Positions 8,775 through 58,323 of a DNA stretch of 64,000 bases are shown here, one piece after another. Both the position numbers and the translations under genes were made by a program. The notes beneath the pieces are model-generated. The model was given only the letters and a program-made list of their open reading frames with translations. It had not been told where the DNA came from and did not search any database. The DNA is taken from IMG/VR virus record IMGVR_UViG_3300042502_001233, positions 1-64,000 of that record; one strand, 5' to 3'. Position 1 is the stretch's first letter, and every line of letters begins with the position of its first letter.

Positions 8775-8863
8775 CAAGATAGTTAATTTTGTGGATTTGA
8801 ACCACTTCGTTCGCATTTTAAGTGTGAATTTTTAACCAGTTTTTGTTTGCTGAAACTATCTTT
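8775..8863 (-). ncRNA. Y-RNA-like/tRNA-mimic RNA (TTCAGCAA-stem family, copy 1)
   Basis: terminal stem AAGATAGTT/AACTATCTT enclosing TCAGCAAAC, an anticodon-like arm and T arm GTGG-TTCAAAT-CCAC. Confidence 0.5.
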
Positions 8864-8866
8864 TAG

Positions 8867-8949
8867 TACGGATAGTCGGACTCGAACCGACACTCATATT
8901 TCAGAACACGGGTCTAAGCCGTGTGTGTCTACCATTCCACCATATCCGC
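8867..8949 (-). tRNA. tRNA-Leu(TAG)
   Basis: CACGG-CTTAGAC-CCGTG. Confidence 0.9.
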
Positions 8950-8958
8950 AAATCTGAA

Positions 8959-9102
8959 TTAGATTTCTTCTAATTCAATATCTTCCAAGTTTTCTTGTTC
9001 TTTATTCTCTTTATTGGCACATGTAATATGCACAAATTTTTTGTCTACTAGTAAAGCAGCTCCGTGGATAATACCACCGCATTCGCAACAACTAAATTTC
9101 AT
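8959..9102 (-). CDS. small putative zinc-binding protein
   Basis: MKFSCCECGG...HITC, acidic tail, 47 aa. Confidence 0.5.
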   Translation of the reverse strand: MKFSCCECGGIIHGAALLVDKKFVHITCANKENKEQENLEDIELEEI

Positions 9103-9132
9103 ACTTCCATAATTTTAAATAACATGTTATTG

Positions 9133-9216
9133 TAGCCAGAGTGGGAATCGAACCCACACGTCCTTGCGGACACAAGATTTTGAGTCTTGCGCGTCTACCT
9201 GTTTCGCCATCTGGCC
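9133..9216 (-). tRNA. tRNA-Leu(CAA)
   Basis: CAAGA-CTCAAAA-TCTTG. Confidence 0.95.
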
Positions 9217-9285
9217 ATGATGTGATTGGCATTTTAACCATTGCATGAATTTAATCAAGTGTGAGTATACGCCTTTCACATTTTG

Positions 9286-9372
9286 TAGCTAGAGTGGGAC
9301 TCGAACCCACATGGACCTTTCGGTCCGCCAGATTTTAAGTCTGGTGCGTATACCTAATTCCGCCATCTAGCC
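9286..9372 (-). tRNA. tRNA-Leu(TAA)
   Basis: CCAGA-CTTAAAA-TCTGG. Confidence 0.95.
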
Positions 9373-9379
9373 ATTATTT

Positions 9380-9904
9380 TTAATTCATCTTCCTAATTGA
9401 ATGATGTCTTAATCTATGACAATTTGAACATAAAACGTCGCATTTATCAATCTCATTTTTTATTGTTTCCCATTTTTGAAATTTTATCTTATTAAAATTA
9501 GGGTCTTTCTCAGACGGGTTTAAGTGATGAAAATCAAAAATACAATAATTATTATCATTTAATTTTATTTTACAATCATTACATTCACCACCTTTATATT
9601 GAACCATTTTAATTTTAACGTTTTTAACTCTTTCCGAATGATAAATATTACTACATTTTTTGCAATAACCGTTATAATCATCTCTATTTGTACGTTTATA
9701 ATATTCGCTTAATGGTTTTAATTTTTGACATTTTGGACATAATTTATCAACAGATGATTTTTTGTTATGTTGATTAAGTTTAGTTTTTAATTCAAATTTT
9801 TTAAGCCAATATTTTACGTTACTTTGAGAACATTTTAATTCATCAGCAATTTCTCTTTGAGATTTACCTAGATTGATAAACTTTATTAATAAATCTTTTT
9901 CCAT
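9380..9904 (-). CDS. HNH endonuclease
   Basis: CPKC, FDFHH...LCSNCHRLRH. Confidence 0.8.
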   Translation of the reverse strand: MEKDLLIKFINLGKSQREIADELKCSQSNVKYWLKKFELKTKLNQHNKKSSVDKLCPKCQKLKPLSEYYKRTNRDDYNGYCKKCSNIYHSERVKNVKIKMVQYKGGECNDCKIKLNDNNYCIFDFHHLNPSEKDPNFNKIKFQKWETIKNEIDKCDVLCSNCHRLRHHSIRKMN

Positions 9905-9967
9905 TTGTGTTTTATATTAAAAATAACTCACTTTTGAAAAAAGTAAATATTAACCAGTGATTTATTG

Positions 9968-10053
9968 TAGGGCTAGCTGGACTCGAACCAGCGTTATACT
10001 TCTCGTCTCCATCTTGTAAGGATGGGATGTTTAACCAACTACACCATAGCCCC
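9968..10053 (-). tRNA. tRNA-Val(TAC) with long variable region
   Basis: CCATC-CTTACAA-GATGG plus 16-nt variable region. Confidence 0.85.
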
Positions 10054-10067
10054 GTTTTTGGTAGGTT

Positions 10068-10367
10068 TTAACCTACCTTGATGAAGTCTTCGTTTTCAAT
10101 GGCTCTTTCAATCCATCTAATCAATTCAGACCCTTTGATTTCAGCATCGAATGTGGTTGTACCCAAGTCCTCAGCCAAAACAAGTGTTGGAATTTTTTCA
10201 ATTTCTCTAGTGTCCATCACATATGATTTTTGAACCGTTTTGATTGGAAATTGATAAGTTCCGTCTAATACTTCAACTTTATAATATAGGTTCCCACCTA
10301 CATAGTGGCTAAATCTAGCCAGATTCTTTGACTTATATAAGTCTTTTTTGATTTCATTTTTTTCCAT
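10068..10367 (-). CDS. hypothetical protein
   Basis: ORF, start reassigned to MEKNEIKK outside tRNA-Cys. Confidence 0.7.
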   Translation of the reverse strand: MEKNEIKKDLYKSKNLARFSHYVGGNLYYKVEVLDGTYQFPIKTVQKSYVMDTREIEKIPTLVLAEDLGTTTFDAEIKGSELIRWIERAIENEDFIKVG

Positions 10368-10388
10368 CGCTTCCTTCTTTATCATTAG

Positions 10389-10459
10389 AGGCGCCGACTG
10401 GATTCGAACCAGTGTACGGGGATTTGCAGTCCCCTGCCTAGCCACTCGGCCACAGCGCC
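10389..10459 (-). tRNA. tRNA-Cys(GCA)
   Basis: canonical, U73. Confidence 0.95.
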
Positions 10460-10471
10460 ATTGTTATCAAT

Positions 10472-10500
10472 AAAAAAACCCATCTGGTTAGGATGGGCTT
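10472..10500 (-). terminator. attenuator terminator of Cys/Val/Leu tRNA operon
   Basis: AAGCCCATC-CTAACCA-GATGGGTTT-TTTT, 12 nt before tRNA-Cys. Confidence 0.85.
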
Positions 10501-10528
10501 TTTGAGAGAGATACTTATCTTATTCAGA

Positions 10529-10612
10529 TTAGTTAACACACAAGAAGCCCAGCTGTGTTTCCACAAGCAAGCATAAGCTTAAAAGGACTAATATGTTAAA
10601 AGTATTTCTCAT
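10529..10612 (-). CDS. attenuator leader peptide MRNTFNILVLLSLCLLVETQLGFLCVN
   Basis: 27-aa ORF rich in L/V/C; TGGGCTT complementary to terminator 5' arm AAGCCCA. Confidence 0.8.
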   Translation of the reverse strand: MRNTFNILVLLSLCLLVETQLGFLCVN

Positions 10613-10653
10613 TTTGTTTTTTTGTTTTCTGTAAGTTAAACTTTGATACAGTG

Positions 10654-10685
10654 CAAATATACTAACTATTTTAATACAAGTCAAG
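10654..10685 (-). promoter_or_regulatory. Bacteroidetes-type promoter
   Basis: CTTGAC...TATATTTG. Confidence 0.7.
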
Positions 10686-10731
10686 TGTTTTGCAATTTTT
10701 TTTATAATAAATATGTAATTTTTTAAAAAAG

Positions 10732-11313
10732 TTATTTTTTTGACCAATCTTTTTTAGATTGTCTAGCAGCTGCTTTTGATATACCACAACTAGTTGCTTT
10801 AAAACTAGGGCCTTGCATTCCATCTAATGCAACATCATCTTGCTTGTTTTGGTTTTTAATATACTTTTGATATTTTTTTAAATTTATTTTTAATTTGGTA
10901 CCATCTTCTAACTCTCTATAGATAATATCTGGCATTTCAAAAGATGTTCCATCTAAATAATCAGCTTCTTGAGCCATAGTTGTATTACAACTTGATTTAA
11001 ACTCTTCTTCGTCTACGACTTCAACAAAGTTTCTAATGTACGCCCCTTTTATAAAATTTTCATAATTCTTTTTACGTTGAGCTTCTCTTTTTTCTTTGGC
11101 AGCAGCTCTTTGTTCTGGTGTACCAAACATTGGTTTTTGAGTTGTTGTTTGAGTTGTTGGTTCAGTCGTTGTTGGTTGAGTTGTTTGACCTTGCGCACCC
11201 AACGTACCAAGCGTCATTGCGGCACCAGCCGCTAAGCCTTTCCAATTAACTTCGTTTAATTGTTCTTCTTCTAATAAAGATTCTCTAAGTTTTTGTTTTA
11301 TAAACGTTTTCAT
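10732..11313 (-). CDS. hypothetical protein, possibly virion-associated
   Basis: N-terminal MKTFIKQKLRE motif, T/Q/P-rich linker. Confidence 0.7.
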   Translation of the reverse strand: MKTFIKQKLRESLLEEEQLNEVNWKGLAAGAAMTLGTLGAQGQTTQPTTTEPTTQTTTQKPMFGTPEQRAAAKEKREAQRKKNYENFIKGAYIRNFVEVVDEEEFKSSCNTTMAQEADYLDGTSFEMPDIIYRELEDGTKLKINLKKYQKYIKNQNKQDDVALDGMQGPSFKATSCGISKAAARQSKKDWSKK

Positions 11314-11335
11314 CAATATTTTTATTATAAATATC

Positions 11336-11935
11336 TTAAAAATCCAATAATTTCAAAACACCTTTAGAATTATAACCAATATTTTCAGAATGAACATCTA
11401 AATCAGAAGCATTTGGTATTTGTTCTTTTATTTTAAGAAAAAAATCAATATAATTTATTGTTACTGTTTTTTCGGATGGTTCTAAATCTTTATCCGTGAT
11501 AACTAACTCACGTAACTTATGCAATAAATTAGGGTTTTTTGTACCTCTCCAAAACATTTCTTCAATAGCAGAACTTACTGTTGTAGAATCTTTAAATAAA
11601 CTTAAATCGTATTTTGAAACCACATCATATAGAATTTCATCATCGTTTTCGATTTCATCCGTATTTAATTTCTCTATGATAGCATATCTATCATTGTGTT
11701 TGTAAACTTTTGGGAATATGTCTGGATAATCTAACATTTTTTCGATATGACTAGCTTTTAAAACACCACTACCAACTGGTTTACCCCATTCACCAACATA
11801 CGCAATTTTGATTACTTTAGAAGGGTCTTTTTCAAAAGGGTATACGATATGGTCTCTACCCATACCTAAGTCACCCTTTTGTCTGATTTCTTCTTCAATA
11901 CTCTCTCTAACCAAAAATTTTATCAATGATTTCAT
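11336..11935 (-). CDS. protein kinase-like protein
   Basis: G-rich loop GMGRDHIVY, KVIK, DVHSENIG, LLDF. Confidence 0.65.
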   Translation of the reverse strand: MKSLIKFLVRESIEEEIRQKGDLGMGRDHIVYPFEKDPSKVIKIAYVGEWGKPVGSGVLKASHIEKMLDYPDIFPKVYKHNDRYAIIEKLNTDEIENDDEILYDVVSKYDLSLFKDSTTVSSAIEEMFWRGTKNPNLLHKLRELVITDKDLEPSEKTVTINYIDFFLKIKEQIPNASDLDVHSENIGYNSKGVLKLLDF

Positions 11936-11991
11936 AGTGTTTTTTACTATAAATATTGACAAAATCTAAAAACTTTCTTATATTTATGATT

Positions 11992-12099: not shown

Positions 12100-12136
12100 T
12101 TTTCACAAATCGATATATTTATAATAAATTAAACAC

Positions 12137-12946: not shown

Positions 12947-12947
12947 A

Positions 12948-13763: not shown

Positions 13764-13769
13764 ATTATA

Positions 13770-18299: not shown

Positions 18300-18509
18300 T
18301 TACCAACTATCGTAGTCGGTTATATCTTTTTTAACTTCAAACAATCCTTTTTCTTTGCTTTTTATAATAACTTCAATGTTATCACCAATACCAGTTGGTG
18401 TAAAGCAAAACGTTCTTGTGTAATATGTCTCATGACCGTATAATGTTTTAACAGCGTCTTCAACTTCTTTTAAGTTTTGTTTTTCTTTTTCGTTTAAACT
18501 AAAATCCAT
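18300..18509 (-). CDS. hypothetical protein
   Basis: MDFSLNEKE...DITDYDSW. Confidence 0.6.
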   Translation of the reverse strand: MDFSLNEKEKQNLKEVEDAVKTLYGHETYYTRTFCFTPTGIGDNIEVIIKSKEKGLFEVKKDITDYDSW

Positions 18510-19798
18510 TAGTGTTCCATTTGTATTAAATGAGAAATTGTACATTGTACTGGATTGTAAATGATAAACTCATCATTTCTCAAGTCAGCACCACCGTGAG
18601 CGTATACGCTATCAAAACCATCCTTTTGGATGTTAGAGTAACTCAAACTATAGCATGATGAATCATGTTTATGAATGTGTTTCTCGTTCCCTAAATGTAC
18701 ATCGAACAATGCCAAGAAACCTATTTGAGAATTCCCTCTAGTCCAATGAGAACCTGATAGAGAACTATACCCTAGCGATTTTTGGCTCTTGTTTGCAAAA
18801 TATACACCATCACCGAACATTGAACCAGTATACACCGCGCCAGAAGGTCTAATCATAAGACCAGTCTGAATAATGTTAAACCAGTTCTCGTTACGCGAAC
18901 CATGCCAGTAAAGTCTTTTCTTTTTAACTTTGGCAGTTTTAAAGTGAGCATCAAACTTAGCTTGTGTAGCCAAGTTAACCACTTTGAAAATCTTTTTAGC
19001 TTTGTTGGCGTTATCACCCAATAATTTGGTGATAAGGTTAAGAGTTTCACTGTCTTTTTCAACTTCAACTTTAAGACCCATTTGAGTAAGAATGTCAATG
19101 TCTGACATTTCTTCACCAGTGGTTTCAACAGTTTGTTTTTGTTGTTTGATAAGTTTAACCTGACCAGACATCGTATCTAACGCGCTTTGTTCTTCACCCA
19201 ACAACCTTTGTGCTTTTTCTAATTCAACATCGTCACCCAACCCTTGAACCAAATGGTTTTTAACGTTGTCCATCTTTCTTGGGATGATTGTGTAAAGCTT
19301 CAACAACTCGTTGTTAACGTCTTTAAGGTCACCACCAACTTTCAACATAGCAGTTACTCTTGATAACACTTCTTGAGCCGATTCCACTTGTTGTTCAGAA
19401 ACTGCATCTTGTGTTACTTTGTAGTTTTTCTGGATAGACTTATTCGCGTATGCCATAAGGTCTTGGACCAATTTCTTAACCATTGCGTCTTTGATTGCTT
19501 CAACGGTATTGTTTTTTGATGCACCGTTTGAATCATCAACAACTGGTTCAGCTAACAATTCAGTTACGTCAGTGTAACCTTTGGTTGATGACGTTTTTTC
19601 GCGTAAGATTTTATCCCACTCGTTTTTACTTTTAAACACAGTAGCCATGTTTTTACCCACTCTACCATACTCACATTTTATTCTACCATCTGAAAGTTCT
19701 TCCATGATGTAGACTTTGTTGCTATTGTCTGTTTTACCATTGTCTACCGACACGTGAATCAGTTTAGCATATCTTAACCCGTTTTCTTTTGTAACCAT
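18509..19798 (-). CDS. PARP-like ADP-ribosyltransferase (WGR + regulatory + catalytic)
   Basis: YGRVG; LYTIIP; YWHGSR, GSMFGDGVYFA, KSLGY, NDEFIIY (H-Y-E triad). Confidence 0.9.
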   Translation of the reverse strand: MVTKENGLRYAKLIHVSVDNGKTDNSNKVYIMEELSDGRIKCEYGRVGKNMATVFKSKNEWDKILREKTSSTKGYTDVTELLAEPVVDDSNGASKNNTVEAIKDAMVKKLVQDLMAYANKSIQKNYKVTQDAVSEQQVESAQEVLSRVTAMLKVGGDLKDVNNELLKLYTIIPRKMDNVKNHLVQGLGDDVELEKAQRLLGEEQSALDTMSGQVKLIKQQKQTVETTGEEMSDIDILTQMGLKVEVEKDSETLNLITKLLGDNANKAKKIFKVVNLATQAKFDAHFKTAKVKKKRLYWHGSRNENWFNIIQTGLMIRPSGAVYTGSMFGDGVYFANKSQKSLGYSSLSGSHWTRGNSQIGFLALFDVHLGNEKHIHKHDSSCYSLSYSNIQKDGFDSVYAHGGADLRNDEFIIYNPVQCTISHLIQMEH

Positions 19799-20444: not shown

Positions 20445-21521
20445 TTATGACAACCCAACTTTTTCGTTTAATCTTTGGGAGAAAAACTTTTTAGAAATTT
20501 CAGAAACATATTTACCAATATCCTTTATTTCTAACCCTTCATCGCTAATAGTTTGAAGCTCTTCTTTTACTATGTCATTCATAACTGATTTTATATATTT
20601 ACCAGTATCTTTAACATCGAAAGTACCACCATTTAACGTGTCAAATGTTTCATTAAGCATTTGTTCAAGTCTCCAAGCTGGGGTGATTTTTTCAGCTAAG
20701 TCTATGCATTTTTGTACCCTCGCATCATCAACTGGTTTGAGTGTTTTAACTTTTGAAACACCAGCGTGTTTCTCACCTTTAGATTTGAAAAAGATTCTAA
20801 CACCATTTTCATCTAAATTTGAAAAAACAATCCCTTCACCTACAGTATTTGGAAAACCAAAGTGTTTAGCCACTGGACATTCGTCTTCAACACTTAAAGT
20901 CATTTCAATCATTTTGTTTTGACTAAGTTCAGGTCTATTAAAATCAATTTCAATTTCATATGTTTGAAAATCTAACATATTGTAAATTCTTTTTTCGTTA
21001 TCCCTGAAACCTGAATAATCGACCCAATAAGCTGGGTTGTTTTTTAATTCTTCTTCATTTTCTACGATAGGTGAAATCTTTATACCATAGATAAACACCG
21101 ATTTTTCAATATTGGTAATACCAACACCTTTTTGAATATTAGAACCAGCCCACTCTGAATAAACACCAATTGTGTTATTATCCAAATCGATACCGTATTT
21201 ATCAGCTATTTCGTTGATGATTCTCAACCAAGATTCTTTTGTTGATTCTGCAAAAAAAGCAAAACCAGCATTGTCGGATTGAGGGGTGATGATATTACCT
21301 CTACTCTGACACCACATACCTGATTTGTTATTAAACAAAACACCAGCTGAAGTACCGTGTAGTTTAACAGTACCAATAAATTTAATAATTGGTTTTGGTT
21401 TAGATGGGTCGTAAATAGGCTCACCATTTTCATCTAAACCACAGAAGTTATGTTTTCTGTTTACATCACTAACAACCTCTCTAAATTGAGGGGTTGATGG
21501 GTATTTTACCATTTTTTTCAT
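20445..21521 (-). CDS. RNA ligase, Rnl2 family
   Basis: KLHGT motif I, GEGIV, FKSK. Confidence 0.8.
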   Translation of the reverse strand: MKKMVKYPSTPQFREVVSDVNRKHNFCGLDENGEPIYDPSKPKPIIKFIGTVKLHGTSAGVLFNNKSGMWCQSRGNIITPQSDNAGFAFFAESTKESWLRIINEIADKYGIDLDNNTIGVYSEWAGSNIQKGVGITNIEKSVFIYGIKISPIVENEEELKNNPAYWVDYSGFRDNEKRIYNMLDFQTYEIEIDFNRPELSQNKMIEMTLSVEDECPVAKHFGFPNTVGEGIVFSNLDENGVRIFFKSKGEKHAGVSKVKTLKPVDDARVQKCIDLAEKITPAWRLEQMLNETFDTLNGGTFDVKDTGKYIKSVMNDIVKEELQTISDEGLEIKDIGKYVSEISKKFFSQRLNEKVGLS

Positions 21522-21653: not shown

Positions 21654-23057
21654 TTAATCTACCAATAAGGTTTTAATCATGTTTTCAATTTCTTTTATAG
21701 ACTCCAAGGAATCACACGTGTCTTTGTCGTCTCTAAACCCAGCAAAAGAAGGGTATAACAATGAGTAATTACCATCAACATCGTTTGATAACCCGTTACA
21801 TTTACATTGGATTACAGTACCCAACAAATTCTCTTGGTTTTCTGTGATATAAGCCATCATATCTTCTTTAAGACCTTGTGGTCTTGTTTTAACCAACCCA
21901 TCAGAAGACTCGCAGTTAAAGCTAGAGATTACATTCTCATTCTTTGTTCCTTTGGTTCCGTAGTTGAACCCTACAATACGTAAATCAACATCCATTTCCA
22001 ATTTCATTTTGATTTGCCACGTTGGTTTTCCGTCTTTCCACTCACCATTCCATGCTTTAAGGATTGTACCTTCTTCACCAGCAGCCAATACTTCTTGGAA
22101 GTGGGTCATAGCTTGTGCATAATTGTGAACAATAAGACTTTCAACGATGTTTACATGTGTTGGACCAACTCTTTCGATAGCTCTTTCCAAATATGCTAAA
22201 CGTTCAGCGTATTTAAGTTTTGATGATTTGTTGAAGTATTCATCTACTGTAAGACGGTCCCATACGGTATAACGAATTTTGTCTAGAGCTTCTTCCATCG
22301 AACCATGTTTGTCAGTGAATGCTTTTAATTTTTTCTCATTTTCTTTGTCACTTCTAGAATCTTTTTTACCCAAGATGTCGATAAGTGACGCGATGATACC
22401 GTTAGACTCGTATCTAGGGGTATCAACCATAGTTAACTCTCCGTTAAGAACACAATCTTCAAATGAAGTTAATTCATCTAAGAATTTAGCGCCAGTTAAG
22501 ATTGTTGGTTCACCTTGACGTGATTCCATTTCAACTTCACCACTACGAATAACAGCGTTGCAGTAACGACCATCCATTTTTATTTGTGATATTCCTTTAC
22601 CACCTTTTTCGAAAATTTTACGAGCTTTCTTCTCGTCGAAAGATACAGCACCCATATAAGGTGTGTCTTCAATAAGGTCTTTGAATACTTTATTCATAAA
22701 AGTAGTTCCCATACCAATCTTACAGTCTTTCTCAATGATACGTTCAATGATGTAAGCATCTTCTGGTTGTAAATTAGACAAAACATTTACTAATAAAGTT
22801 AACGCTTCATTACCCGAAACTTCTCTATTTGATATACTTTCTAATATATTTAAACCCCAATTCAAATCTCTTGATGGTTCAAATATTTGTCTTGTGTATT
22901 CAGGAATTCTTTTAATATAGAATTTAACTCGTTTAGAGTTTGCCATGTATAGCACTTTCTTTAGTAACTCGTTATCCGAGTACTTTCTAAGGATATCAAC
23001 CTTAGCGTTGTTACCGCTCTCAGCAGCAATCTCATCAAAAATTTGTTTGATTGTCAT
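21654..23057 (-). CDS. ATP-dependent DNA ligase
   Basis: KMDGR, LNGEL, EGTILK, KMK, OB-fold end. Confidence 0.92.
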   Translation of the reverse strand: MTIKQIFDEIAAESGNNAKVDILRKYSDNELLKKVLYMANSKRVKFYIKRIPEYTRQIFEPSRDLNWGLNILESISNREVSGNEALTLLVNVLSNLQPEDAYIIERIIEKDCKIGMGTTFMNKVFKDLIEDTPYMGAVSFDEKKARKIFEKGGKGISQIKMDGRYCNAVIRSGEVEMESRQGEPTILTGAKFLDELTSFEDCVLNGELTMVDTPRYESNGIIASLIDILGKKDSRSDKENEKKLKAFTDKHGSMEEALDKIRYTVWDRLTVDEYFNKSSKLKYAERLAYLERAIERVGPTHVNIVESLIVHNYAQAMTHFQEVLAAGEEGTILKAWNGEWKDGKPTWQIKMKLEMDVDLRIVGFNYGTKGTKNENVISSFNCESSDGLVKTRPQGLKEDMMAYITENQENLLGTVIQCKCNGLSNDVDGNYSLLYPSFAGFRDDKDTCDSLESIKEIENMIKTLLVD

Positions 23058-24854: not shown

Positions 24855-25805
24855 TTAGAGCATTTTGTATAACAATTTGTCATCGTAGTTAACTATGAAG
24901 TCTTCTACTGAATCAACTTTACCATCAACCAACCCAAAATACAATCCAGTGAATTGTTTTAAGTCGTGTTTTCCACAAACTTCAAAGACAGCCGCAGCGT
25001 ATCTTTTCTTTTCTTCTTTGGTTATGTTTCTTGGTTTACGAGCGCTTAACTCACCCCACATTTCATTTAACTTTACAGTCAATTTGTCGTAGTTCTCTTT
25101 AAGTCTTAACAATTCGTCTTTTCTTTCTGGGAAAGTTGAGGCGAATTCTTCTATCTCGTTAGATTTAACGATAGTTATGATATTGTGTTCAGCAGTTTTA
25201 CCTTTAAGGTGATGTGCGTGTACGTAAGCTGGGTTTTTTATCTTGATACGATTGAAATTAGCGTCTACAACAACGTAACCTTCTTCTGACCATGGCATAC
25301 CCTCAAATGTACGTAACAACGCACCCACATCTTTAGCGTTCAAGTCAAATCTTTTAACCAATGGTAATCTTAAAGATACGGATACCATTTCTAAGTCTTT
25401 CCAAGACAATTCCACTAAAGTCACTCGGTTTCTAACAGTCAACAAAGTTGCTGATGATTCTCCGTGTGGTGCTACAACGATATTGTATGGAGTAGTTAAC
25501 TCAAAAACGTATACGTGGTCTTTATCCAACATACATGGGTTTAACGCGTATTGTTTTGTTACAGTATCCCAAAATAACGAGTTGAATGTTGTTCCCATTT
25601 TGTTGTTTACTTCACCTTCACCTTCGGCTGTACCAGTTGTACCAGCAAACCATTTATTAGCGTGCCAATCCCAATATACTTGGATTAATGAATTATGTAC
25701 TAGAATACCATTAGCGAAAAAATTATTAGTTATTTTGGTTTGAATGTCGTATCTTTTAGATTCACAAGTAATTGATTTGATACTTTTTATTTTAACTATT
25801 TTCAT
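24855..25805 (-). CDS. split intein C-fragment (38 aa) + RNA ligase 1 C-extein
   Basis: ...NNFFANGILVHN|SLI; FELTTPYN, EGYVV, RIKIK. Confidence 0.9.
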   Translation of the reverse strand: MKIVKIKSIKSITCESKRYDIQTKITNNFFANGILVHNSLIQVYWDWHANKWFAGTTGTAEGEGEVNNKMGTTFNSLFWDTVTKQYALNPCMLDKDHVYVFELTTPYNIVVAPHGESSATLLTVRNRVTLVELSWKDLEMVSVSLRLPLVKRFDLNAKDVGALLRTFEGMPWSEEGYVVVDANFNRIKIKNPAYVHAHHLKGKTAEHNIITIVKSNEIEEFASTFPERKDELLRLKENYDKLTVKLNEMWGELSARKPRNITKEEKKRYAAAVFEVCGKHDLKQFTGLYFGLVDGKVDSVEDFIVNYDDKLLYKML

Positions 25806-26719
25806 TTTAATAAATTTATTTGTTCAACAATAAATAACTCCAACTCAATATCATTAAGCGATGATATATCCATTTCCCATAATGTGATAACTTTGTATTG
25901 ATTTTTATATGCAATATCTATTTTTTTTTCATCTTTCTTCCATATAGTTTCAGCTAAGACATGTTTTTTTGGGAATGGTAATATATCACCAATCTTATAT
26001 TTTCTTGGGTTAGCGTGCCAAAAATCACCATTTACTTCAATAAGAATATTAGTATTGTTAATATAGTAATCAAATACTTTACCTTTTAACGTAAATTGTG
26101 GTTCAAATTTAAGTCCGATATCAATCAAAATCTTACCAACTCTTTTTTCCAAAATAGAAGAACCGCCACTACATAGTCTTTTTATTTGATTTAGTTTTTG
26201 TTCTTCGGTATATGAATACCAACCACTAATTCTTTTTACACCATATTTTTTTAACATTAATTCATTAACATTATCTTTAAATTCATCAAGTTTAAAGATA
26301 TTATCAACACCATAATTTTTGATAAAAGTTTTTTGTTTTTTTTCTTTTATTGATTCGTTGTTTGAGACATTATCAACACCAAAACGTTTAAAACAAGTTG
26401 TTTTATATTTATTTCTAACTGATTTTTGATTACTTATTTCTTTTGATGATTTCAACTTAATATTATTTAATTTTAATAGTGAAGTTAAACTTTTATTAGG
26501 TATTTTATATTCTTTAACCAAACTAAAAACAGAACCGTCATTAATATATTTTTTAATAATTTCACCTATTAACACATCAGTTAAACCAAACCTTGTTTTT
26601 AAAACAAACAATTCTAGTTCAGTTTCATTTTTAAATTCACTATTGTGACTATTTTTAACGTGTAATTTAAACATTTTACTATCAAATTCACACTCACATT
26701 TTATACATTTAATCTTCAT
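25802..26719 (-). CDS. free-standing Vsr/DUF559-like endonuclease
   Basis: FDYY..IEVNGDFWH...D..K...LWE; YGVDN repeats. Confidence 0.8.
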   Translation of the reverse strand: MKIKCIKCECEFDSKMFKLHVKNSHNSEFKNETELELFVLKTRFGLTDVLIGEIIKKYINDGSVFSLVKEYKIPNKSLTSLLKLNNIKLKSSKEISNQKSVRNKYKTTCFKRFGVDNVSNNESIKEKKQKTFIKNYGVDNIFKLDEFKDNVNELMLKKYGVKRISGWYSYTEEQKLNQIKRLCSGGSSILEKRVGKILIDIGLKFEPQFTLKGKVFDYYINNTNILIEVNGDFWHANPRKYKIGDILPFPKKHVLAETIWKKDEKKIDIAYKNQYKVITLWEMDISSLNDIELELFIVEQINLLK

Positions 26720-26776
26720 AACTTTTTTTTATTATAAATATCTAGAAATATTAGAAAAGTTAGATTAGTATCAAAT

Positions 26777-27379
26777 TTATTTAGTAATTAATAAAAATTC
26801 ATCTTCTTCTGTTAATTCGCTGACCATTCTATAACAATTTAGTTTAGGTAACCAAACTTTATGATTTCCAGTTAATTTAACGGTAGTCCCATCTTCTAAT
26901 TCAATTTCAAACCAATCGTTAATATTCTTCTTAACTGAATAATCAATAATCTCGTCATACATTGGTTCATTACTTTCTAAATCTAATGATAAAACTTTAC
27001 CAGAATACTTAGTTTCACATATCTCACGAATCGTCATTTCACCATCTTCAGTTATAAGAACAGTGTCCTCATGACAGCAACCATCAAGTTTCTCTAACAC
27101 ATTGGCTGTGTTCCAATCTATTTTAGCAGCGTTTCCTTCTTCAGCGTTGAAGAATTTACGGAACGCCAACGACATAACTTTCCACGTACCTTTTTCAAGA
27201 ATAAGACCACGACAATCTTGCATCTCTGGCAACCCCATAAGAGTTGGTGACGATAATTGGTCATATTTCAAAAGAATCTTGTTATCGTATTCTCTTGATT
27301 TAAGTTTAAAGTCATTTATAGCTTTATCTAGTCCATATTTTTTTATATATGTAACGATAGCTAATTCATTATTTTTCAT
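26777..27379 (-). CDS. RNA ligase 1 N-extein + split intein N-fragment (100 aa)
   Basis: CRGLIL, KFFN, EKLDG|CCHEDT...LTGNHKV. Confidence 0.9.
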   Translation of the reverse strand: MKNNELAIVTYIKKYGLDKAINDFKLKSREYDNKILLKYDQLSSPTLMGLPEMQDCRGLILEKGTWKVMSLAFRKFFNAEEGNAAKIDWNTANVLEKLDGCCHEDTVLITEDGEMTIREICETKYSGKVLSLDLESNEPMYDEIIDYSVKKNINDWFEIELEDGTTVKLTGNHKVWLPKLNCYRMVSELTEEDEFLLITK

Positions 27380-36113: not shown

Positions 36114-36120
36114 AATTTAG

Positions 36121-36207
36121 GGTGAAAAGACGGGACTCGAACCCGCAAGGACATTTCTGTCATCTGGCTCACAACCAGACTCGCTACCGTTACGTACTAC
36201 AATCACC
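36121..36207 (-). tRNA. tRNA-His(GTG) with long variable arm
   Basis: TCTGG-TTGTGAG-CCAGA + GACA-GAAA-TGTC; imperfect acceptor. Confidence 0.75.
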
Positions 36208-36216
36208 ATGTATTTC

Positions 36217-44290: not shown

Positions 44291-44350
44291 AATTTCTAAT
44301 TTTTTGTTTATTATAAATATACCACACTTTTAAAAAATGTAAAGTGTTTG

Positions 44351-44423
44351 TAGTTCTAATCGGACTCGAACCGATATCTCTCCGTTTTAGAGGCGGGTGT
44401 ATTCACGTTAATACTATAGAACC
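44351..44423 (-). tRNA. amber suppressor tRNA (anticodon CTA)
   Basis: GGTTCTA/TAGAACT acceptor, loop CT-CTA-AA, canonical T arm; weak anticodon stem. Confidence 0.8.
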
Positions 44424-54347: not shown

Positions 54348-54420
54348 AAATCGCACTGGTACGACTTTTTTCTAATTTCTAGATATTTATAGATATAACA
54401 ATTATCTAACACAAAATATC

Positions 54421-54588: not shown

Positions 54589-55195
54589 TGATGAACAGAA
54601 AAAAGCTAGAGCTGAATACCAAAAAGCTTGGCGAGAAGCTAATAAAGAACGTTTAGCTGAATGGCATAGAGAATATAGAAAGAATAACCCAGAAAAGAAC
54701 AAAACCAACACTAAAGCGTATAGAGAGCGTCACCCAGAAAAAGCAAAAGAATCAACTAAAAAATATAAAGCGAATAATCAAGACAAAATTAAAGCTGCAT
54801 CAATAGTGTATAGAGGTAGAAAACTTGAATTACATAATATCAAAAAAGCTAATGACCCAGTGTATAATTTAAAATGTACTGTTAGAAGCGGTATATTAAA
54901 ATCTTTCTCCAGAATCAACGCTAAGAAAAACAATAAAACAGTTGAAATTCTAGGATGTTCTTATGAGTTTTTAAAAGAACATATTGAATCAAAATTTGAA
55001 CCATGGATGACTTGGGGCAACAAAGGTCTTTATAATGGTGAATTAAACTACGGTTGGGATGTAGACCACATCATACCACTGGATACAGCGGTGACCGAAG
55101 AAGATGTGATTAGACTTAACCATTATACCAACCTACAACCACTTTGTAGTAAAATCAATCGAGATATTAAAAAAAATAACCCTAGTTACTACTAG
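54572..55195 (+). CDS. HNH homing endonuclease
   Basis: WDVDHIIP...HYTNLQPLC; close paralog of 49644..50309. Confidence 0.85.
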   Translation: MGRVLNDEQKKARAEYQKAWREANKERLAEWHREYRKNNPEKNKTNTKAYRERHPEKAKESTKKYKANNQDKIKAASIVYRGRKLELHNIKKANDPVYNLKCTVRSGILKSFSRINAKKNNKTVEILGCSYEFLKEHIESKFEPWMTWGNKGLYNGELNYGWDVDHIIPLDTAVTEEDVIRLNHYTNLQPLCSKINRDIKKNNPSYY

Positions 55196-55207
55196 GGTTA
55201 TTTATTA

Positions 55208-55891
55208 TTATGAAAGAAGCTCTATTTTACCTCTTAATATGTCTTTTAGACTAGCAGTCTTATTAGTGATATGGTCTACAACCATATCATCCTTTACACG
55301 ATAAGTCCTTCTTTTATCGGCACGACCACCTTCACCAATTTGTTCATTACGGTTTTCAATGGTTAATGAATCATGACCTGTTTTATAAAAGTTATTAACC
55401 CTTTGAGTTAATTCAGCAATCGCTGCTTCTTTATTTTGGTGTTGACTTCGACTATCACGTCTAACTTTAATCCCAGTTGCTATATGAGTTACAACAACAC
55501 ATGATTCAGTTTTATTCCTTTTTTGCCCACCGTTCCCAGTTCCTCTGGTTGTTTCCAAACGATATTCACTAGGATGTAATTCTACTTCCTTATAATCGTT
55601 TTCTTCCATAAGTGCTACGGTGATTGAACTTGTATGAACCCTACCTTTTCTTTCGGTTGGTGGTACTCTTTGCCACCTATGTGAACCTACATGGTTTAAG
55701 AACACATTTTTAACATTATATCCAGATATTCAGATAGTTATCATACCATCTTTCTCATCAATAACTTTAGCTTCAAATGAATAATTTTTGCAAGCTTTTA
55801 AAAAAATATCTCGCATATCTTTAATTAATAATTTTGAATCATCACCGCCTTCTGACGCTCTTAATTCTAATAAAATTTTATTTGTTTTCAT
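55208..55891 (-). CDS. class I peptide chain release factor-like protein (no domain 1) with in-frame TGA at codon 54
   Basis: LELRASEGG..., HRWQRVPPTERKGRVHTS, GGQ; frame continuous across TGA 55730-55732. Confidence 0.85.
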
Positions 55892-56669
55892 TGTATTTTG
55901 GTCTATTTAAATTGCCTTCATATATAACACCGTTTATTTCCCTTGTTGTTCCCCACATTGGTCTAAGATTCGATAAAGCGTTTACCACACTGGCTGGAGT
56001 TTCTGGTGGAAAACTAATAATTTGTTTTATATGGTCTATGTGCCATTCTCCATAATTATCCCATGTCATTCCGTCAGTAAATAAGTTTGTGATATGTTCT
56101 TTAAATTCTAAAGCTGAATAGCCTAACATATCTATGGTCTTACCAGTTTTTTTGTTATGTAAATCACGTAGCGAATTTTTTAATATTCGCCTCCAAGCTA
56201 TTACGTGTGGGTTTTTTTGATTATATAATTTAGCGTTTTCTTTTATTTTTTCTTTATTATTTTTTCTATATTCTTTACCGTAAGCTGATTTTTTTTCACG
56301 ATTATCTATTAAATATTGTTTGTCATACGCTTTTTTCTTTTCTTTATTTAACGCAACGTATTCTTTATTTTTTTGTTTAACATATTCAATATTTTCTTTA
56401 CGATATTCTTTTTGATAATTATTTCGTTTATCTTTATTTTCCAAACGGTGGTTAATAAAATACTCATTTAACTTTTCTTTATTCTTTTCCCTATACTTTG
56501 CATCGAGTAACTTCTTTTTTTGTAAAGAAACATCACTATGGATTTTCACATCAGGATATAACTCCCTTAACTGTTTAACCGTTAAATTGTGTGATTTTAA
56601 ATGTTTGGTCGATAATGAAGATAAATCTTTTCCACATACTGGACAAGTTACAAATGAAGATGGTTCCAT
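55878..56669 (-). CDS. HNH homing endonuclease
   Basis: CPVC..HL..H, K/E repeats, WHIDHI...NLRPMW..N. Confidence 0.85.
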   Translation of the reverse strand: MEPSSFVTCPVCGKDLSSLSTKHLKSHNLTVKQLRELYPDVKIHSDVSLQKKKLLDAKYREKNKEKLNEYFINHRLENKDKRNNYQKEYRKENIEYVKQKNKEYVALNKEKKKAYDKQYLIDNREKKSAYGKEYRKNNKEKIKENAKLYNQKNPHVIAWRRILKNSLRDLHNKKTGKTIDMLGYSALEFKEHITNLFTDGMTWDNYGEWHIDHIKQIISFPPETPASVVNALSNLRPMWGTTREINGVIYEGNLNRPKYNENK

Positions 56670-56731
56670 AATATTCTTTTATAATAAATATCACAAATAA
56701 TTAAAAAAACCACAAATGGCAAAGAATTCCA

Positions 56732-56926
56732 TTCGTTCTTAAAGATTTCTTTTGCGTTTTTACCCGTTAGTCAGATGCTAACAAATCCTAACCTATCTTC
56801 GGTTATTATTCAGTCGATGTTATTGTTCTTCGCTGTTTTAATGTAAATGTCGCGCATTTCACAAACCAACAGCTTCGCATCGGTTCCACCTTCTGCGTCT
56901 CGGATTTCTAAATTAATTTTTCCCAT
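56732..56926 (-). pseudogene. orphaned original 5' part of release factor gene (two in-frame TGA)
   Basis: MGKINLEIRDAEGGTDAK...ID*II...FVSI*LTGKNAKEIFKNE. Confidence 0.85.
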
Positions 56927-56962
56927 TGGTTTTGTTTTTTGTTGTTTGTTATTAGTTTTAAT

Positions 56963-56989
56963 AAAAAACCCCATATTGCTATGGGGTTT
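56963..56989 (-). terminator. intrinsic terminator
   Basis: CCCCAT-AGCAAT-ATGGGG-TTTTTT. Confidence 0.75.
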
Positions 56990-56998
56990 AGTATTTTA

Positions 56999-57053
56999 CA
57001 GAATAGTTTTTGTTTTTTTTTCCTTAAAAATTTCAATTGCTGAATCTATTCTT
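56999..57053 (-). ncRNA. TTCAGCAA-stem RNA, copy 2
   Basis: AGAATAG-ATTCAGCAA...CTATTCTG. Confidence 0.45.
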
Positions 57054-57057
57054 CTAG

Positions 57058-57145
57058 TTGCGGAAGTAGGACTCGAACCTACAACACAGTGTTACTGCTC
57101 CTCTAGGTTATGAGCCTAGCATGTTTCCATTTCCACCATTCCGCG
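57058..57145 (-). tRNA. tRNA-Met(CAT), initiator-like C1:A72, long variable arm
   Basis: CTAGG-CTCATAA-CCTAG + 20-nt variable arm. Confidence 0.8.
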
Positions 57146-57152
57146 ATGTATT

Positions 57153-57812
57153 TTATTTTCTACCCTTAACCCAACCTTCGTTCAGATAAGTTTCAAGGTT
57201 TTCTTTTTTTATCTTTTTGTTAGCACCGTCTCTGGTTATCCAACACGTACCGTATTGACTATTTGTTTCACCAATACCAGTACCTTTTCTTTTTTCAGAG
57301 ATTAAACGTTTAGATTCTTCAGCATGATTTTTACCAGTCCAATCTAGATTTTTTAATTTATTCTGTCTGTATTCTTCATTTTCCCAAGCTATTTTATTAA
57401 CATGAGAATTGAATCTACTTAACCAGTTTTCATCACCACCGAACTTTTCTTTTAAAACTTCGTCAGTTTTTTTTCTACCAGCTTTAACACATTTAAACAT
57501 ATGTTCTTCATTGATAAAACCACCACCTTCACCACCAAGAGCCAAATTCATACATTTGGAATCTGAAATTAATTCTTTATTAACAATTTCTTTTTCTCTT
57601 TTAGCTAATTCTTCTCTATTTTCTAAAAATTCTAGAATCTCTTTTGTGTGATTTTCTTTACCGTATTTTCTAATAGAACGTCTTAATGTTTTACCACTAC
57701 CTATATAACCATCTTCTAAGTTATACGTGCTATGCATTCCGATGTACCATCGTCCTGTTATATTACACGTTGTTTTATAAATGTAGTGTATGTTTTTTTC
57801 TTTTCTTGCCAT
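57153..57812 (-). CDS. GIY-YIG (Seg-like) homing endonuclease
   Basis: paralog of 36217..36849. Confidence 0.88.
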   Translation of the reverse strand: MARKEKNIHYIYKTTCNITGRWYIGMHSTYNLEDGYIGSGKTLRRSIRKYGKENHTKEILEFLENREELAKREKEIVNKELISDSKCMNLALGGEGGGFINEEHMFKCVKAGRKKTDEVLKEKFGGDENWLSRFNSHVNKIAWENEEYRQNKLKNLDWTGKNHAEESKRLISEKRKGTGIGETNSQYGTCWITRDGANKKIKKENLETYLNEGWVKGRK

Positions 57813-57870
57813 TTCAATTTCTTTAATAATAAATATCTCAGAAAACTGAAAAGTACAAAAAAGTCTCCAG

Positions 57871-57943
57871 TTGCGGGGGCACGACTCGAACGTGCGACCT
57901 CAAGGTTATGAGCCTTGCGAGCTACCTACTGCTCTACCCCGCG
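57871..57943 (-). tRNA. tRNA-fMet(CAT)
   Basis: CGCGGGG start, C1:A72. Confidence 0.92.
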
Positions 57944-57950
57944 ATGTTAG

Positions 57951-58030
57951 TGCGGTAGGCTGGAGTGACCCAGCTATCTTAGTGAATGCTGTGAAGCAAT
58001 CGTTCAGATAAAAACTTAATTTCTACCGCG
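57951..58030 (-). ncRNA. tRNA-like RNA, possible TCA loop
   Basis: GCGGTAG/CTACCGC stem, GCTGG-GTCACT-CCAGC arm, central CTTCACA. Confidence 0.35.
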
Positions 58031-58036
58031 TGTGGC

Positions 58037-58105
58037 CAGAATCTCTGTTTTGCTTGTTTTTTCTCAAATGTAAAATTGCTTTTTTATTTGCTGAAAAGAT
58101 TCTTT
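58037..58105 (-). ncRNA. TTCAGCAA-stem RNA, copy 3
   Basis: AGAATCT-TTTCAGCAAAT...AGAGATTCTG. Confidence 0.45.
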
Positions 58106-58122
58106 AACCATATAATGTATCT

Positions 58123-58323
58123 CAAGATGATAGTTCGCCTTGTTTTACGTTACTAACGTGCTCACGGCAGTGGATTTAAAGTGCCCTCACAACACTTCCA
58201 GTTTTATTCACTTTCGTGTGACTTTAAGAACTCATGATATTTCAATGTGGTTATTAAAATCTATGGGAGACCAGTTACTCCCTCTCTTAAATTTGTAGTT
58301 TTCTGTTTGCAGAAATCATCTTT
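58123..58323 (-). ncRNA. TTC(T)GCAA-stem RNA, copy 4 (multi-hairpin)
   Basis: AAGATGAT-TTCTGCAAAC...ATCATCTTG enclosing 4 hairpins. Confidence 0.5.

What the first reader, a model, noticed from the sequence alone, without database searches (positions are those of the whole stretch)
8775..58323. Family of four small RNAs with a closing stem and TTC(A/T)GCAA motif, one containing a tRNA mimic
Copies at 8775-8863, 56999-57053, 58037-58105 and 58123-58323 share AAGA-stem-TTCWGCAA...stem'-TG. Stem sequences differ but pairing is kept, and interiors vary from 30 to 170 nt. Copy 1 encloses D-loop, anticodon (TAA) and T-arm-like elements, an architecture reminiscent of bacterial YrlA Y RNAs (Ro60-binding stem + tRNA-like domain). 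All are co-transcribed with tRNAs.
Basis: partly seen in the sequence, partly recalled or inferred. Interest (0 to 1): 0.65.

Follow-up and report, generated by a model that had tools for sequence, protein, structure and literature searches.

The report
Jumbo-phage small RNAs sharing one handle
A 362-kb freshwater bacteriophage carries at least seven small structured RNAs inside its tRNA operons; all share one conserved stem-plus-motif "handle" around interchangeable interiors (two are tRNA look-alikes), a design like Y RNAs and, almost letter for letter, like the Class I RNAs so far known only from social amoebae.

Summary
All four elements lie on the minus strand at the reported coordinates. 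Each has a 7-8 bp closing helix, TTCWGCAA directly after the 5' arm and a G after the 3' arm. The window holds 4 such sites against 0.13 expected. Three more copies lie elsewhere in the same 362-kb phage genome.

In 22 short members from related phages the helix is always paired, and six of its seven pairs change on both sides. The interiors diverge freely. Free-standing copies carry a second, covarying outer helix.

The YrlA idea is only partly right. Two copies outside the window have a T-arm, a closed acceptor hairpin and a D-arm, and they hit Rfam YrlA below threshold. No Ro60 gene and no Ro60-binding motif is present.

The handle instead matches the hallmarks of Dictyostelium Class I RNAs: AAG start, short covarying stem, UU(A)CAGCAA, CUG end, about 60 nt. 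It scores 28-31 bits against a gathering score of 41.5.

Freshwater metatranscriptome contigs cover c4 as a discrete unit. They carry a 3'-to-5' joint, which means either a circular RNA or tandem copies.

Best reading: a new phage family of modular small RNAs, released from tRNA transcripts, whose handle binds an unidentified protein.

The parts
8775..8865 (-). c1. Inner helix AAGAUAGU/ACUAUCUU, motif UUCAGCAA (8854-8847), canonical T-arm GUGG-UUCAAAU-CCAC (8805-8791), 3' G at 8775. It lies between tRNA-Leu(tag) and tRNA-Leu(aag).
   Evidence: Model R1, which was not trained on it, scores it 38.1 bits. The orthologue in G001/G002 is identical except for one compensatory T-arm pair and one inserted base, although the flanking tRNAs differ.
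56999..57055 (-). c2. Helix AGAAUAG/CUAUUCU, one spacer A, motif UUCAGCAA (57044-57037), 30-nt A-rich interior, end CUGU. It starts 5 nt after tRNA-Met (57057-57145).
   Evidence: R1 scores it 61.4 bits. Its interior diverges in relatives while the handle is kept. The Rfam Class I model scores it 22.2 bits.
58032..58110 (-). c3. Inner helix AGAAUCUU/GAGAUUCU (58103-58096 with 58045-58038), motif UUCAGCAA (58095-58088), G 58037. Outer helix UGGU (58110-58107) with GCCA (58036-58033).
   Evidence: The Rfam Class I model scores it 29.7 bits, E 2.2e-4 for the whole genome, and the next best hit is 15 bits.
58118..58330 (-). c4. Inner helix AAGAUGAU/AUCAUCUU (58322-58315 with 58131-58124), motif UUCUGCAA (58314-58307), about 175-nt interior of several hairpins, G 58123. 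Outer helix UAUCU (58330-58326) with AGAUA (58122-58118).
   Evidence: The outer helix covaries in relatives: UAUCC/GGAUA and AAACC/GGUUU. It is covered by metatranscriptome contigs from two studies, which carry a 3'-to-5' joint.
58364..58394 (-). Promoter-like site upstream of c4: TTGACA (58394-58389), 17 nt, then TATCTTTG (58371-58364), which fits the Bacteroidota -7 box TAnnTTTG.
   Evidence: Read from the sequence and conserved in relatives. TAnnTTTG lies 5-80 nt upstream of 64 of 277 minus-strand ORFs, against 18 for the reversed motif. Shine-Dalgarno motifs are found upstream of only 1 of 277.
56963..56989 (-). Intrinsic terminator-like hairpin CCCCAUAGCAAUAUGGGG followed by a U run, after c2. 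It marks the end of the operon.
   Evidence: The hairpin is conserved in relatives.
57057..57943 (-). Operon context: tRNA-Met (57870-57943), homing endonuclease ORF (57153-57812), tRNA-Met (57057-57145).
   Evidence: phrog_314, E 5.5e-36. The layout resembles the T4 tRNA cluster with segB, rnaC and rnaD.
57944..58028 (-). An uncalled tRNA-like element between c3 and tRNA-Met. It has a 7-bp acceptor-like stem GCGGUAG/CUACCGC and a T-arm-like hairpin GCUGG-N7-CCAGC.
   Evidence: Read from the sequence. It is kept in relatives with a C-to-U change that leaves a G-U pair. ARAGORN and Rfam do not call it.

Best explanation
The elements belong to a previously undescribed family of modular small RNAs. 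They are encoded on the transcribed strand of the tRNA/tmRNA operons of a clade of roughly 360-kb freshwater phages whose promoters are of the Bacteroidota type.

Each RNA has a constant handle and an exchangeable interior.

The handle: an invariant A and an invariant G flank a 7-8 bp helix of variable sequence, A-[AGRRUNN]...[NNAYYCU]-G. Directly after the 5' arm comes the single-stranded motif U-H-C-W-G-C-A-A.

The interiors:
- an A-rich loop (c2, c3);
- one hairpin with a 7-nt loop (c5);
- a T-arm (c1);
- a tRNA-like domain with a T-arm, a closed acceptor hairpin and a D-arm (c6, c7);
- about 175 nt of hairpins (c4).

Proposed mechanism, inferred and not shown. The RNAs are cut out of polycistronic tRNA transcripts. 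RNase Z and RNase P acting on the neighbouring tRNAs would release the tRNA-adjacent copies. Cleavage at the outer helix would release the free-standing ones. The handle then binds one protein, of phage or host, as the Ro60 stem of Y RNAs and the Rnp1A-bound Class I RNAs do. The interior brings a second partner to it or occupies one; for the tRNA-like interiors that partner would be a tRNA-binding enzyme or a tRNA-directed nuclease. The partner is unknown and is not Ro60.
For: - The family is real and strand-specific: 7 closed motifs on the minus strand, 0 on the plus strand, 0.88 expected.
- The inner helix covaries strongly.
- The outer helix covaries in free-standing copies. Its mean length is 3.8 bp against 2.3 with permuted partners, 0 of 200 permutations reaching the observed value.
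- In orthologues the handle is kept while the interiors of c2, c3 and c5 diverge.
- c1 is more conserved than its flanking tRNAs.
- The c7 orthologue keeps the T-arm through two compensatory pairs. It keeps the closed hairpin with an entirely different sequence.
- Model R1 recovers the untrained c1 and finds members in seven related contigs.
- Position in the operon: 4-5 nt after tRNAs, with a promoter before c4 and a terminator after c2.
- Metatranscriptome contigs cover c4 at about 19x. The adjacent c3 and the promoter region have none, and the neighbouring ORF has about 3x.
- Resemblance to two protein-bound RNA classes: YrlA at 41.2 bits for c7, and Class I at 28-31 bits for five members, which are the only non-tRNA, non-tmRNA hits there apart from two weak hits that look like chance (RsmY 25.3 bits, permuted tmRNA 24.5 bits).
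Against: - No binding protein is identified. No TROVE, RRM or RtcB gene is present in the genome.
- The ORFs next to the RNA loci have no informative family.
- RNA ends are not mapped, because contigs cannot show them.
- c2 and c3 have no coverage in the runs laid.
- The outer helix and the operon position would equally suit a pure processing or stability signal.
- The Rfam matches are all below gathering scores.
- The family was found only in relatives with ClpP identity of 69% or more. It may therefore be a young, lineage-specific invention of unknown importance.
Confidence: 0.5

Rival explanations
1. The elements are bacterial-type Y RNAs (YrlA/YrlB). The handle binds the host's Ro60 (Rsr), and the tRNA-like copies act as in Salmonella or Mycobacterium.
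For: - c7 and c6 have the YrlA topology and match RF02553 over the whole model, at 41.2 and 21.3 bits.
- Several copies with different effectors per genome is the pattern seen for Y RNAs (PMC4201824).
- Some Bacteroidota have TROVE genes; B. thetaiotaomicron rings in the control.
Against: - No TROVE gene was found in this phage or in five relatives.
- The Ro60 motif GNCGAAN0-1G is absent from the handle.
- The scores are below the gathering score of 69, and the model gives 27.7 bits on an ordinary tandem-tRNA junction.
- Known YrlA genes lie next to rsr, and these do not.
Confidence: 0.1
2. The elements are pure cis-acting punctuation. The double helix with its internal loop is a processing or stabilising signal for an RNase III-like or other endonuclease that separates and protects segments of the tRNA operon transcript. 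The excised pieces have no function of their own.
For: - The outer plus inner helix (12-18 bp in all) with an asymmetric internal loop flanks the free-standing copies.
- The elements sit exactly between tRNAs.
- The interiors of c2 and c3 are poorly conserved.
Against: - An invariant single-stranded 8-mer inside the helix is not needed for a duplex nuclease.
- c1 is conserved throughout, more so than its neighbouring tRNAs.
- c6 and c7 carry elaborate tRNA-like domains kept by compensatory change.
- c4 is the most abundant segment of the region laid in the two runs that cover it. A discarded spacer would not be expected to accumulate.
Confidence: 0.17
3. The helices bring the two ends together for ligation, so the mature forms are circular RNAs, at least for c4. 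The phage's own RNA ligases would seal them. This can coexist with the best explanation.
For: - X1 record 3 is a closed 222-nt cycle. Both ends of the 252-nt contig lie on the same 30 nt (58179-58208), and c4's 3' flank is joined to its 5' flank. A second study (X6) shows the same kind of joint.
- No DNA contig has c4 followed by c4: 0 in viral contigs and 0 in metagenome contigs. By contrast 9 plus 9 contigs have c4 followed by c3.
- The phage encodes an Rnl2-like RNA ligase and an intein-split Rnl1-like ligase.
Against: - Contigs cannot distinguish a circle from tandem identical copies in an unsampled strain.
- The linker resembles the normal leader (ACAUUAUAU-N4-A) that precedes each unit, as a tandem array would give.
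- One relative (L163) has a partial internal duplication of the c4 5' module, so duplications do occur.
- The runs laid are stored as contigs, so no raw reads were seen.
Confidence: 0.15
4. The elements are decaying tRNA pseudogenes, or DNA-level sites such as homing-endonuclease targets or recombination hairpins, with no RNA function.
For: - T-arm fragments occur in c1, and tRNA halves in c6 and c7.
- A homing endonuclease gene lies in the same cluster.
- The motif can be read as tRNA positions 8-15 (U8 ... A14 A15).
Against: - The helix covaries and uses G-U pairs, which would be C-A mismatches on the other strand.
- The handle is under purifying selection while the interiors drift.
- All copies lie on the transcribed strand.
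- c4 is present in RNA libraries with a non-uniform profile.
Confidence: 0.05

Closest known systems
Class I RNAs of dictyostelid social amoebae (Rfam RF01414; Kjellin et al. 2021, PMC7919456)
   Same: - A short terminal stem joins the 5' and 3' ends, with its sequence free and its pairing kept.
- A conserved single-stranded motif lies directly after the 5' arm. Class I has CCUUACAGCAA; the phage family has UUCAGCAA, or UUACAGCAA in some relatives.
- The five positions invariant across Dictyostelia (T3, C6, C9, A10, A11) correspond to invariant columns U12, C14, C17, A18 and A19 of A1.
- Class I has a conserved AAG start with an invariant G, and a CUG(U) end. The phage family has A3 A4 G5 ... 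C83 U84 G85.
- Both have a variable A/U-rich interior. Total length is about 55-66 nt for c2, c3 and c5.
- Both occur as many paralogues per genome.
   Different: - The phage RNAs are encoded by a bacteriophage inside tRNA operons, with a bacterial promoter and terminator and no DUSE element.
- The spacing between the U and the CAGCAA is one nt shorter in most copies.
- The stem is 7-8 bp, not 6.
- Some members carry large interiors (tRNA-like, 175 nt) and an outer helix.
- Scores are 28-31 bits against a gathering score of 41.5.
- Class I RNAs were reported as absent outside Dictyostelia.
- Whether the resemblance reflects descent, transfer or convergence is unknown.
Bacterial Y RNAs YrlA/YrlB (Rfam RF02553; Chen et al. 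2014, PMC4201824)
   Same: - Both have a modular design: a terminal helix with a conserved motif on the 5' strand, plus a variable effector.
- In c6 and c7 the effector is a tRNA-like domain in the permuted order T-arm, closed acceptor hairpin, D-arm.
- Both occur as several paralogues per genome, and examples in phages are known.
   Different: - There is no Ro60/TROVE gene nearby or anywhere in the genome.
- The handle lacks GNCGAAN0-1G.
- The matches are sub-threshold.
- Most members (c2-c5) have no tRNA-like domain.
- The RNAs are embedded in tRNA operons, not in an rsr locus.
T4 small stable RNAs rnaC and rnaD (species 1 and 2 RNAs)
   Same: They are small stable RNAs of unknown function, encoded at the end of a phage tRNA cluster that also holds a GIY-YIG homing endonuclease. 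rnaC carries a T-arm-like hairpin.
   Different: There is no shared motif or handle. R1 finds nothing above 10.4 bits in the T4 tRNA region.

Membership tests
YrlA / bacterial Y RNA | Encoded next to (within about 2 kb of) a Ro60/TROVE gene | tested here: not met
   PF05731 finds nothing in the 362-kb genome or in five related records. The controls D. radiodurans and B. thetaiotaomicron ring.
YrlA / bacterial Y RNA | GNCGAAN0-1G motif near the 5' end (proposed Ro60 contact) | tested here: not met
   The handle consensus from A1 is A-AGRRUNN-N-UHCWGCAA. It contains no GNCGAA. The motif definition comes from PMC4201824.
YrlA / bacterial Y RNA | tRNA-like domain: T-arm, closed acceptor stem, D-arm | tested here: met
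   Met for c6 and c7 only, both outside the window. c1 has a T-arm only. c2-c5 have none.
YrlA / bacterial Y RNA | Score at or above the Rfam gathering score (69 bits) | tested here: not met
   c7 scores 41.2 bits and c6 scores 21.3 bits. A tandem-tRNA junction scores 27.7 bits with the same model.
YrlA / bacterial Y RNA | Binds Ro60/Rsr | not testable with these tools
   This needs co-immunoprecipitation or in-vitro binding, and the host is unknown.
Dictyostelium Class I RNA | Short stem joining the 5' and 3' ends, with structure kept and sequence free | tested here: met
   The seven pairs are standard in all 22 sequences, and six of them change on both sides.
Dictyostelium Class I RNA | Conserved 11-nt motif next to the 5' arm (T3, C6, C9, A10, A11 invariant) | tested here: inconclusive
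   Eight or nine of the 11 positions are shared, and all five invariant letters are present. In most copies the spacing is one nt shorter, and the leading CC is absent.
Dictyostelium Class I RNA | Conserved termini: start AAG, end CUGU | tested here: inconclusive
   The letters A3 A4 G5 and C83 U84 G85 are invariant or nearly so in A1. The real RNA ends are not mapped, and the free-standing copies extend into an outer helix.
Dictyostelium Class I RNA | Length 42-65 nt | tested here: inconclusive
   c2 (about 55 nt), c5 (59 nt) and c3 (66 nt) fit or nearly fit. c1 (87 nt), c6 and c7 (about 127 nt) and c4 (199 nt) do not.
Dictyostelium Class I RNA | DUSE promoter element about 60 nt upstream; eukaryotic transcription | tested here: not met
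   The phage copies sit in tRNA operons, with a TTGACA-N17-TATCTTTG promoter and an intrinsic terminator.
Dictyostelium Class I RNA | Score at or above the Rfam gathering score (41.5 bits) | tested here: not met
   Five members score 28.2-30.8 bits. No gathering-level hit was found in five relatives.
tRNA | Cloverleaf recognised by ARAGORN or Rfam RF00005 | tested here: not met
   None of c1-c7 is called.
Retron msr-msd RNA | Adjacent reverse transcriptase | tested here: not met
   PF00078 finds nothing in the genome.
T4 rnaC/rnaD | Sequence or structure similarity to the T4 RNAs | tested here: not met
   R1 scores at most 10.4 bits on the T4 tRNA region. No shared motif is seen by eye.

The most novel reading that the evidence does not exclude
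The phage handle and the dictyostelid Class I RNA are the same RNA device. They would be related by descent or horizontal transfer between phages of prey bacteria and bacterivorous amoebae, or they would have converged on one conserved partner. On this reading a class thought unique to social amoebae has a counterpart in bacteriophages. In addition, at least c4 would mature into a circular RNA sealed by the phage's own RNA ligases.
Probability: 0.2. Interest if true: 0.9.

Novelty: new variant of a known kind. Interest (0 to 1): 0.74.

Why it matters
Phage tRNA clusters are usually read only as codon-usage or anti-defence supplements. Here they also carry a conserved, multi-copy family of non-tRNA RNAs built on one handle, and some members have tRNA-mimicking interiors. 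This gives three testable openings.

1. A new phage RNP, or a decoy system acting on the host's tRNA or RNA-repair machinery.
2. A prokaryotic-virus look-alike of Class I RNAs, whose molecular function in Dictyostelium is still unknown. A shared partner or fold could be found in either system.
3. A possible genome-encoded circular RNA in a phage that also encodes two RNA ligases.

The family is absent from Rfam and was not found in 151 Bacteroidota genomes or in GenBank phages.

Tried and rejected
- Ro60 partner: no TROVE gene in the phage or in five relatives.
- Phage RRM protein, by analogy with Rnp1A: none.
- RtcB: none.
- Retron reading (a1/a2 stem plus a conserved G): no reverse transcriptase.
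- T4 rnaC/rnaD homology: none.
- Known RNA families: nothing at Rfam gathering level in the window, or in five relatives, other than tRNA and tmRNA.
- Tandem c4-c4 genes in DNA: the exact junction and a gapped pattern both found nothing in viral contigs and metagenome contigs. The positive control, c4 followed by c3, found 9 contigs.
- Wider distribution: R1 found nothing in phage contigs with about 60% ClpP identity, in 151 sampled Bacteroidota genomes (only 33 candidates were scored per genome, so this is weak) or in three single genomes. blastn of c3-c4 against GenBank phages found nothing.
After the closing-stem filter only L019 was a true member.
- Host assignment through ClpP in genome contigs: uninformative. 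The best hits are Patescibacteria at 45-48% identity.
- Neighbouring ORFs: no informative Pfam or PHROG family.
- The third fold used the wrong strand of L143 and is meaningless.
- 'relatives' and 'of' searches cannot be run from a virus record or a locus id.

Full report
**Setting.** The window is the first 64 kb of a 362,018-bp IMG/VR virus record with 31% G+C. ARAGORN finds 45 tRNA genes, all on the minus strand, 32 of them in the window. Rfam adds a tmRNA at 58850-59227. Of the minus-strand ORFs, 64 of 277 have TAnnTTTG 5-80 nt upstream, against 18 for the reversed motif. Shine-Dalgarno motifs are practically absent, at 1 of 277. These are the expression signals of Bacteroidota, so the host is probably of that phylum. 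This is an inference. Runs that hold parts of the locus are mostly freshwater metatranscriptomes.

**The observation.** On the minus strand each of the four elements reads A-AGAnnnn, then UUCWGCAA, then an interior, then nnnnUCU(U)-G. Exact coordinates are in the parts list. A scan asked for the motif, a closing helix of at least 7 bp within 260 nt and a following G. It finds 4 sites on the minus strand of the window and none on the plus strand, against a mean of 0.13 (maximum 1) in 200 shuffles. In the genome it finds 7 against 0.88.

The three extra copies all lie on the minus strand:
- c5 at 356290-356348, between tRNA-Gln and tRNA-Tyr;
- c6 at 360430-360556;
- c7 at 361017-361144.

The record is linear in the database, but related contigs show that these loci adjoin the window's start.

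**Comparative evidence.** A conserved stretch of c4 retrieved eight related viral contigs. The neighbouring ClpP gene retrieved 58 loci with 25-100% protein identity. Two larger relatives, G001 and G002, carry orthologues of c1, c2, c3, c4, c5 and c7.

Comparing these orthologues shows the following.
- The handle is unchanged while the interiors of c2 and c3 are largely rewritten.
- c5 has two one-sided stem changes that keep pairing (A-U to G-U, G-C to G-U). Its inner hairpin UCAAA/UUUGA is retained.
- c1 is identical apart from one compensatory T-arm pair and one inserted base, although both flanking tRNAs differ.

In more distant relatives the stems are quite different: AGGAUUAU/AUAAUCCU, GGAAUCAU/AUGAUUCC, AGAGUCG/CGACUCU, AAGUUAG/CUAACUU and AAAGUGG/CCACUUU. 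The motif relaxes to U[UAC]C[AU]GCAA. That scan gave 62 sense hits against 21 antisense hits, and most of the antisense hits are a single conserved coding site.

An alignment of 22 short members (A1) gives the consensus A3-A4-G5-R-R-U8-N-N-(N)-U12-H-C14-A-G-C-A-A19 ... N-N-A-Y-Y-C83-U84-G85. Counted as eight pairs, 92.6% of cells pair against 75% in shuffles. There are 33 cells changed on both sides against 8.5, with 0 of 500 shuffles reaching the observed value. Pairing is 33-45% when the partner is slid. The seven pairs 4-10 with 78-84 are standard in every sequence.

**A second, outer helix.** Copies not preceded directly by a tRNA (c3, c4, c6, c7, and a further locus upstream of ClpP in relatives) have a 4-10 bp helix formed by their flanks. 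An asymmetric internal loop separates it from the inner helix, with 2-4 nt on the 5' side and G or GU on the 3' side.

This helix covaries. For c4 it reads UAUCU/AGAUA, UAUCC/GGAUA and AAACC/GGUUU. For c3 it reads UGGU/GCCA and UUGGC/GCCAA. In c7 it is UAGACA/UGUCUA and in c6 GAGUG/CACUC. Its mean length is 3.8 bp against 2.3 with permuted partners, with 0 of 200 permutations as high. tRNA-adjacent copies have none.

**Interiors.**
- c6 and c7 contain, in order, a T-arm, a closed acceptor-like hairpin and a D-arm.
- Rfam YrlA matches c7 at 41.2 bits and c6 at 21.3 bits over the full model.
- The c7 orthologue keeps the T-arm through two compensatory pairs. It replaces the 7-bp closed hairpin by an unrelated 11-bp one, which argues for a closed hairpin as the selected feature.
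- c1, and two members in relatives, carry a canonical T-arm next to the 3' arm.
- c4 homologues share only the handle and short CGAAC-containing stretches. Their hairpins vary.

**Why it is not a Y RNA in the strict sense.**
- No TROVE gene is present.
- The GNCGAAN0-1G motif is absent.
- The scores are below the gathering score.
- The YrlA model gives 27.7 bits on an ordinary tandem-tRNA junction.

**The Class I resemblance.** The only other Rfam model that responds is Dicty_Class_I_RNA. c3 scores 29.7 bits (E 2.2e-4 for the whole genome), and the next best hit is 15 bits. Four members in relatives score 28.2-30.8 bits. Apart from tRNAs, tmRNAs and two weak hits that look like chance (RsmY 25.3 bits, permuted tmRNA 24.5 bits), they are the only matches in 38.8 kb.

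The published hallmarks of Class I RNAs all have counterparts in invariant columns of A1. Those hallmarks are:
- start AAG with an invariant G;
- a 6-bp stem with compensatory changes;
- an 11-nt motif with invariant T3, C6, C9, A10 and A11;
- end CUGU;
- a median length of about 60 nt;
- a variable remainder.

Some relatives have UUACAGCAA exactly. Against membership stand the sub-threshold scores, the one-nt shorter spacing, the bacterial promoter context and the large interiors of some members. I therefore treat this as a strong resemblance of unknown cause, not as membership.

**Expression.** Contigs from four metatranscriptomes were laid on 56950-58450. c4 (58112-58323) is covered in two studies, at about 19x in X1 and 5-8x in X6. 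c3, the tRNA-like element and the promoter region have no coverage, and the endonuclease ORF has about 3x. DNA contamination does not explain so uneven a profile.

X1 record 3 is a closed 222-nt cycle. c4's 3' flank is joined to its 5' flank through about 10 extra letters, and both ends of the contig lie on the same 30 nt. X6 shows a similar joint. No DNA contig in two collections has c4 followed by c4, whereas 18 have c4 followed by c3.

The phage encodes an Rnl2-like RNA ligase (20445-21521) and an intein-interrupted Rnl1-like ligase (24855-27379). A circular c4 RNA is therefore possible. Tandem copies in unsampled strains are not excluded, and one relative shows a partial internal duplication.

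**Distribution.** Model R1 finds the family in relatives with ClpP identity of 69% or more. It finds nothing in contigs at about 60% identity, in 151 sampled Bacteroidota genomes or in the T4 tRNA cluster. blastn against GenBank phages finds nothing.

**Verdict.** The family is genuine, selected and at least partly expressed. The most economical mechanism is a protein-binding handle with modular interiors, released from tRNA transcripts. I put this at 0.5. A pure processing signal, Ro60 binding through the host and circularisation remain open. 

Noticed in passing
G000 360750-360864 (-), outside the window (L001 8732-8846): A tRNA-like gene (RF00005, 47 bits) has a 49-nt insert in place of the anticodon loop, and the insert itself contains a second T-arm-like hairpin. 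The counterpart in G001/G002 has a 10-nt loop containing GGUUCG. ARAGORN does not call it.
   Followed up: partly
G000 357545-357616 (-), outside the window (L001 5527-5598): An HDV-like ribozyme hit (RF02682, 32.3 bits, gathering score 44) lies directly downstream of tRNA-Pro(tgg). The position is that of the 'theta' ribozymes described behind phage tRNAs.
   Followed up: no
window 44350-44423 (-): A tRNA with anticodon CUA, called Pyl by ARAGORN, may be an amber suppressor. This raises the question of TAG recoding in part of the genome.
   Followed up: no
window 57057-57145, 6502-6588, 36120-36208, 9967-10053 (-): Several tRNAs that are not class II are 86-89 nt long (Met, Asp, His, Val). 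This suggests long inserts or extra arms.
   Followed up: no
window 24855-27379 (-): A T4 Rnl1-like RNA ligase appears to be split by an intein (Hint/intein_splicing hits on both flanking ORFs), with a DUF7487 ORF in between. Nearby are an Rnl2-like RNA ligase (20445-21521), an ATP-dependent DNA ligase (21654-23057) and a protein with a PARP catalytic domain (18509-19798).
   Followed up: partly
window 57944-58028 (-): An uncalled tRNA-like element with a 7-bp acceptor-like stem and a T-arm-like hairpin lies immediately upstream of tRNA-Met. It is conserved in relatives.
   Followed up: partly
window 5320-5393 (-): ARAGORN calls a tRNA with a four-base anticodon (agac), which could be a frameshift-suppressor-like or aberrant tRNA. 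A second odd call, with a two-base anticodon, is at G000 305591-305666.
   Followed up: no
L163 2344-2511 and the matching places in L165, L166, L170, L172, L174: Relatives carry a further family member about 3.5 kb upstream of ClpP, with a 7-10 bp outer helix. No counterpart was found at that place in this genome.
   Followed up: partly
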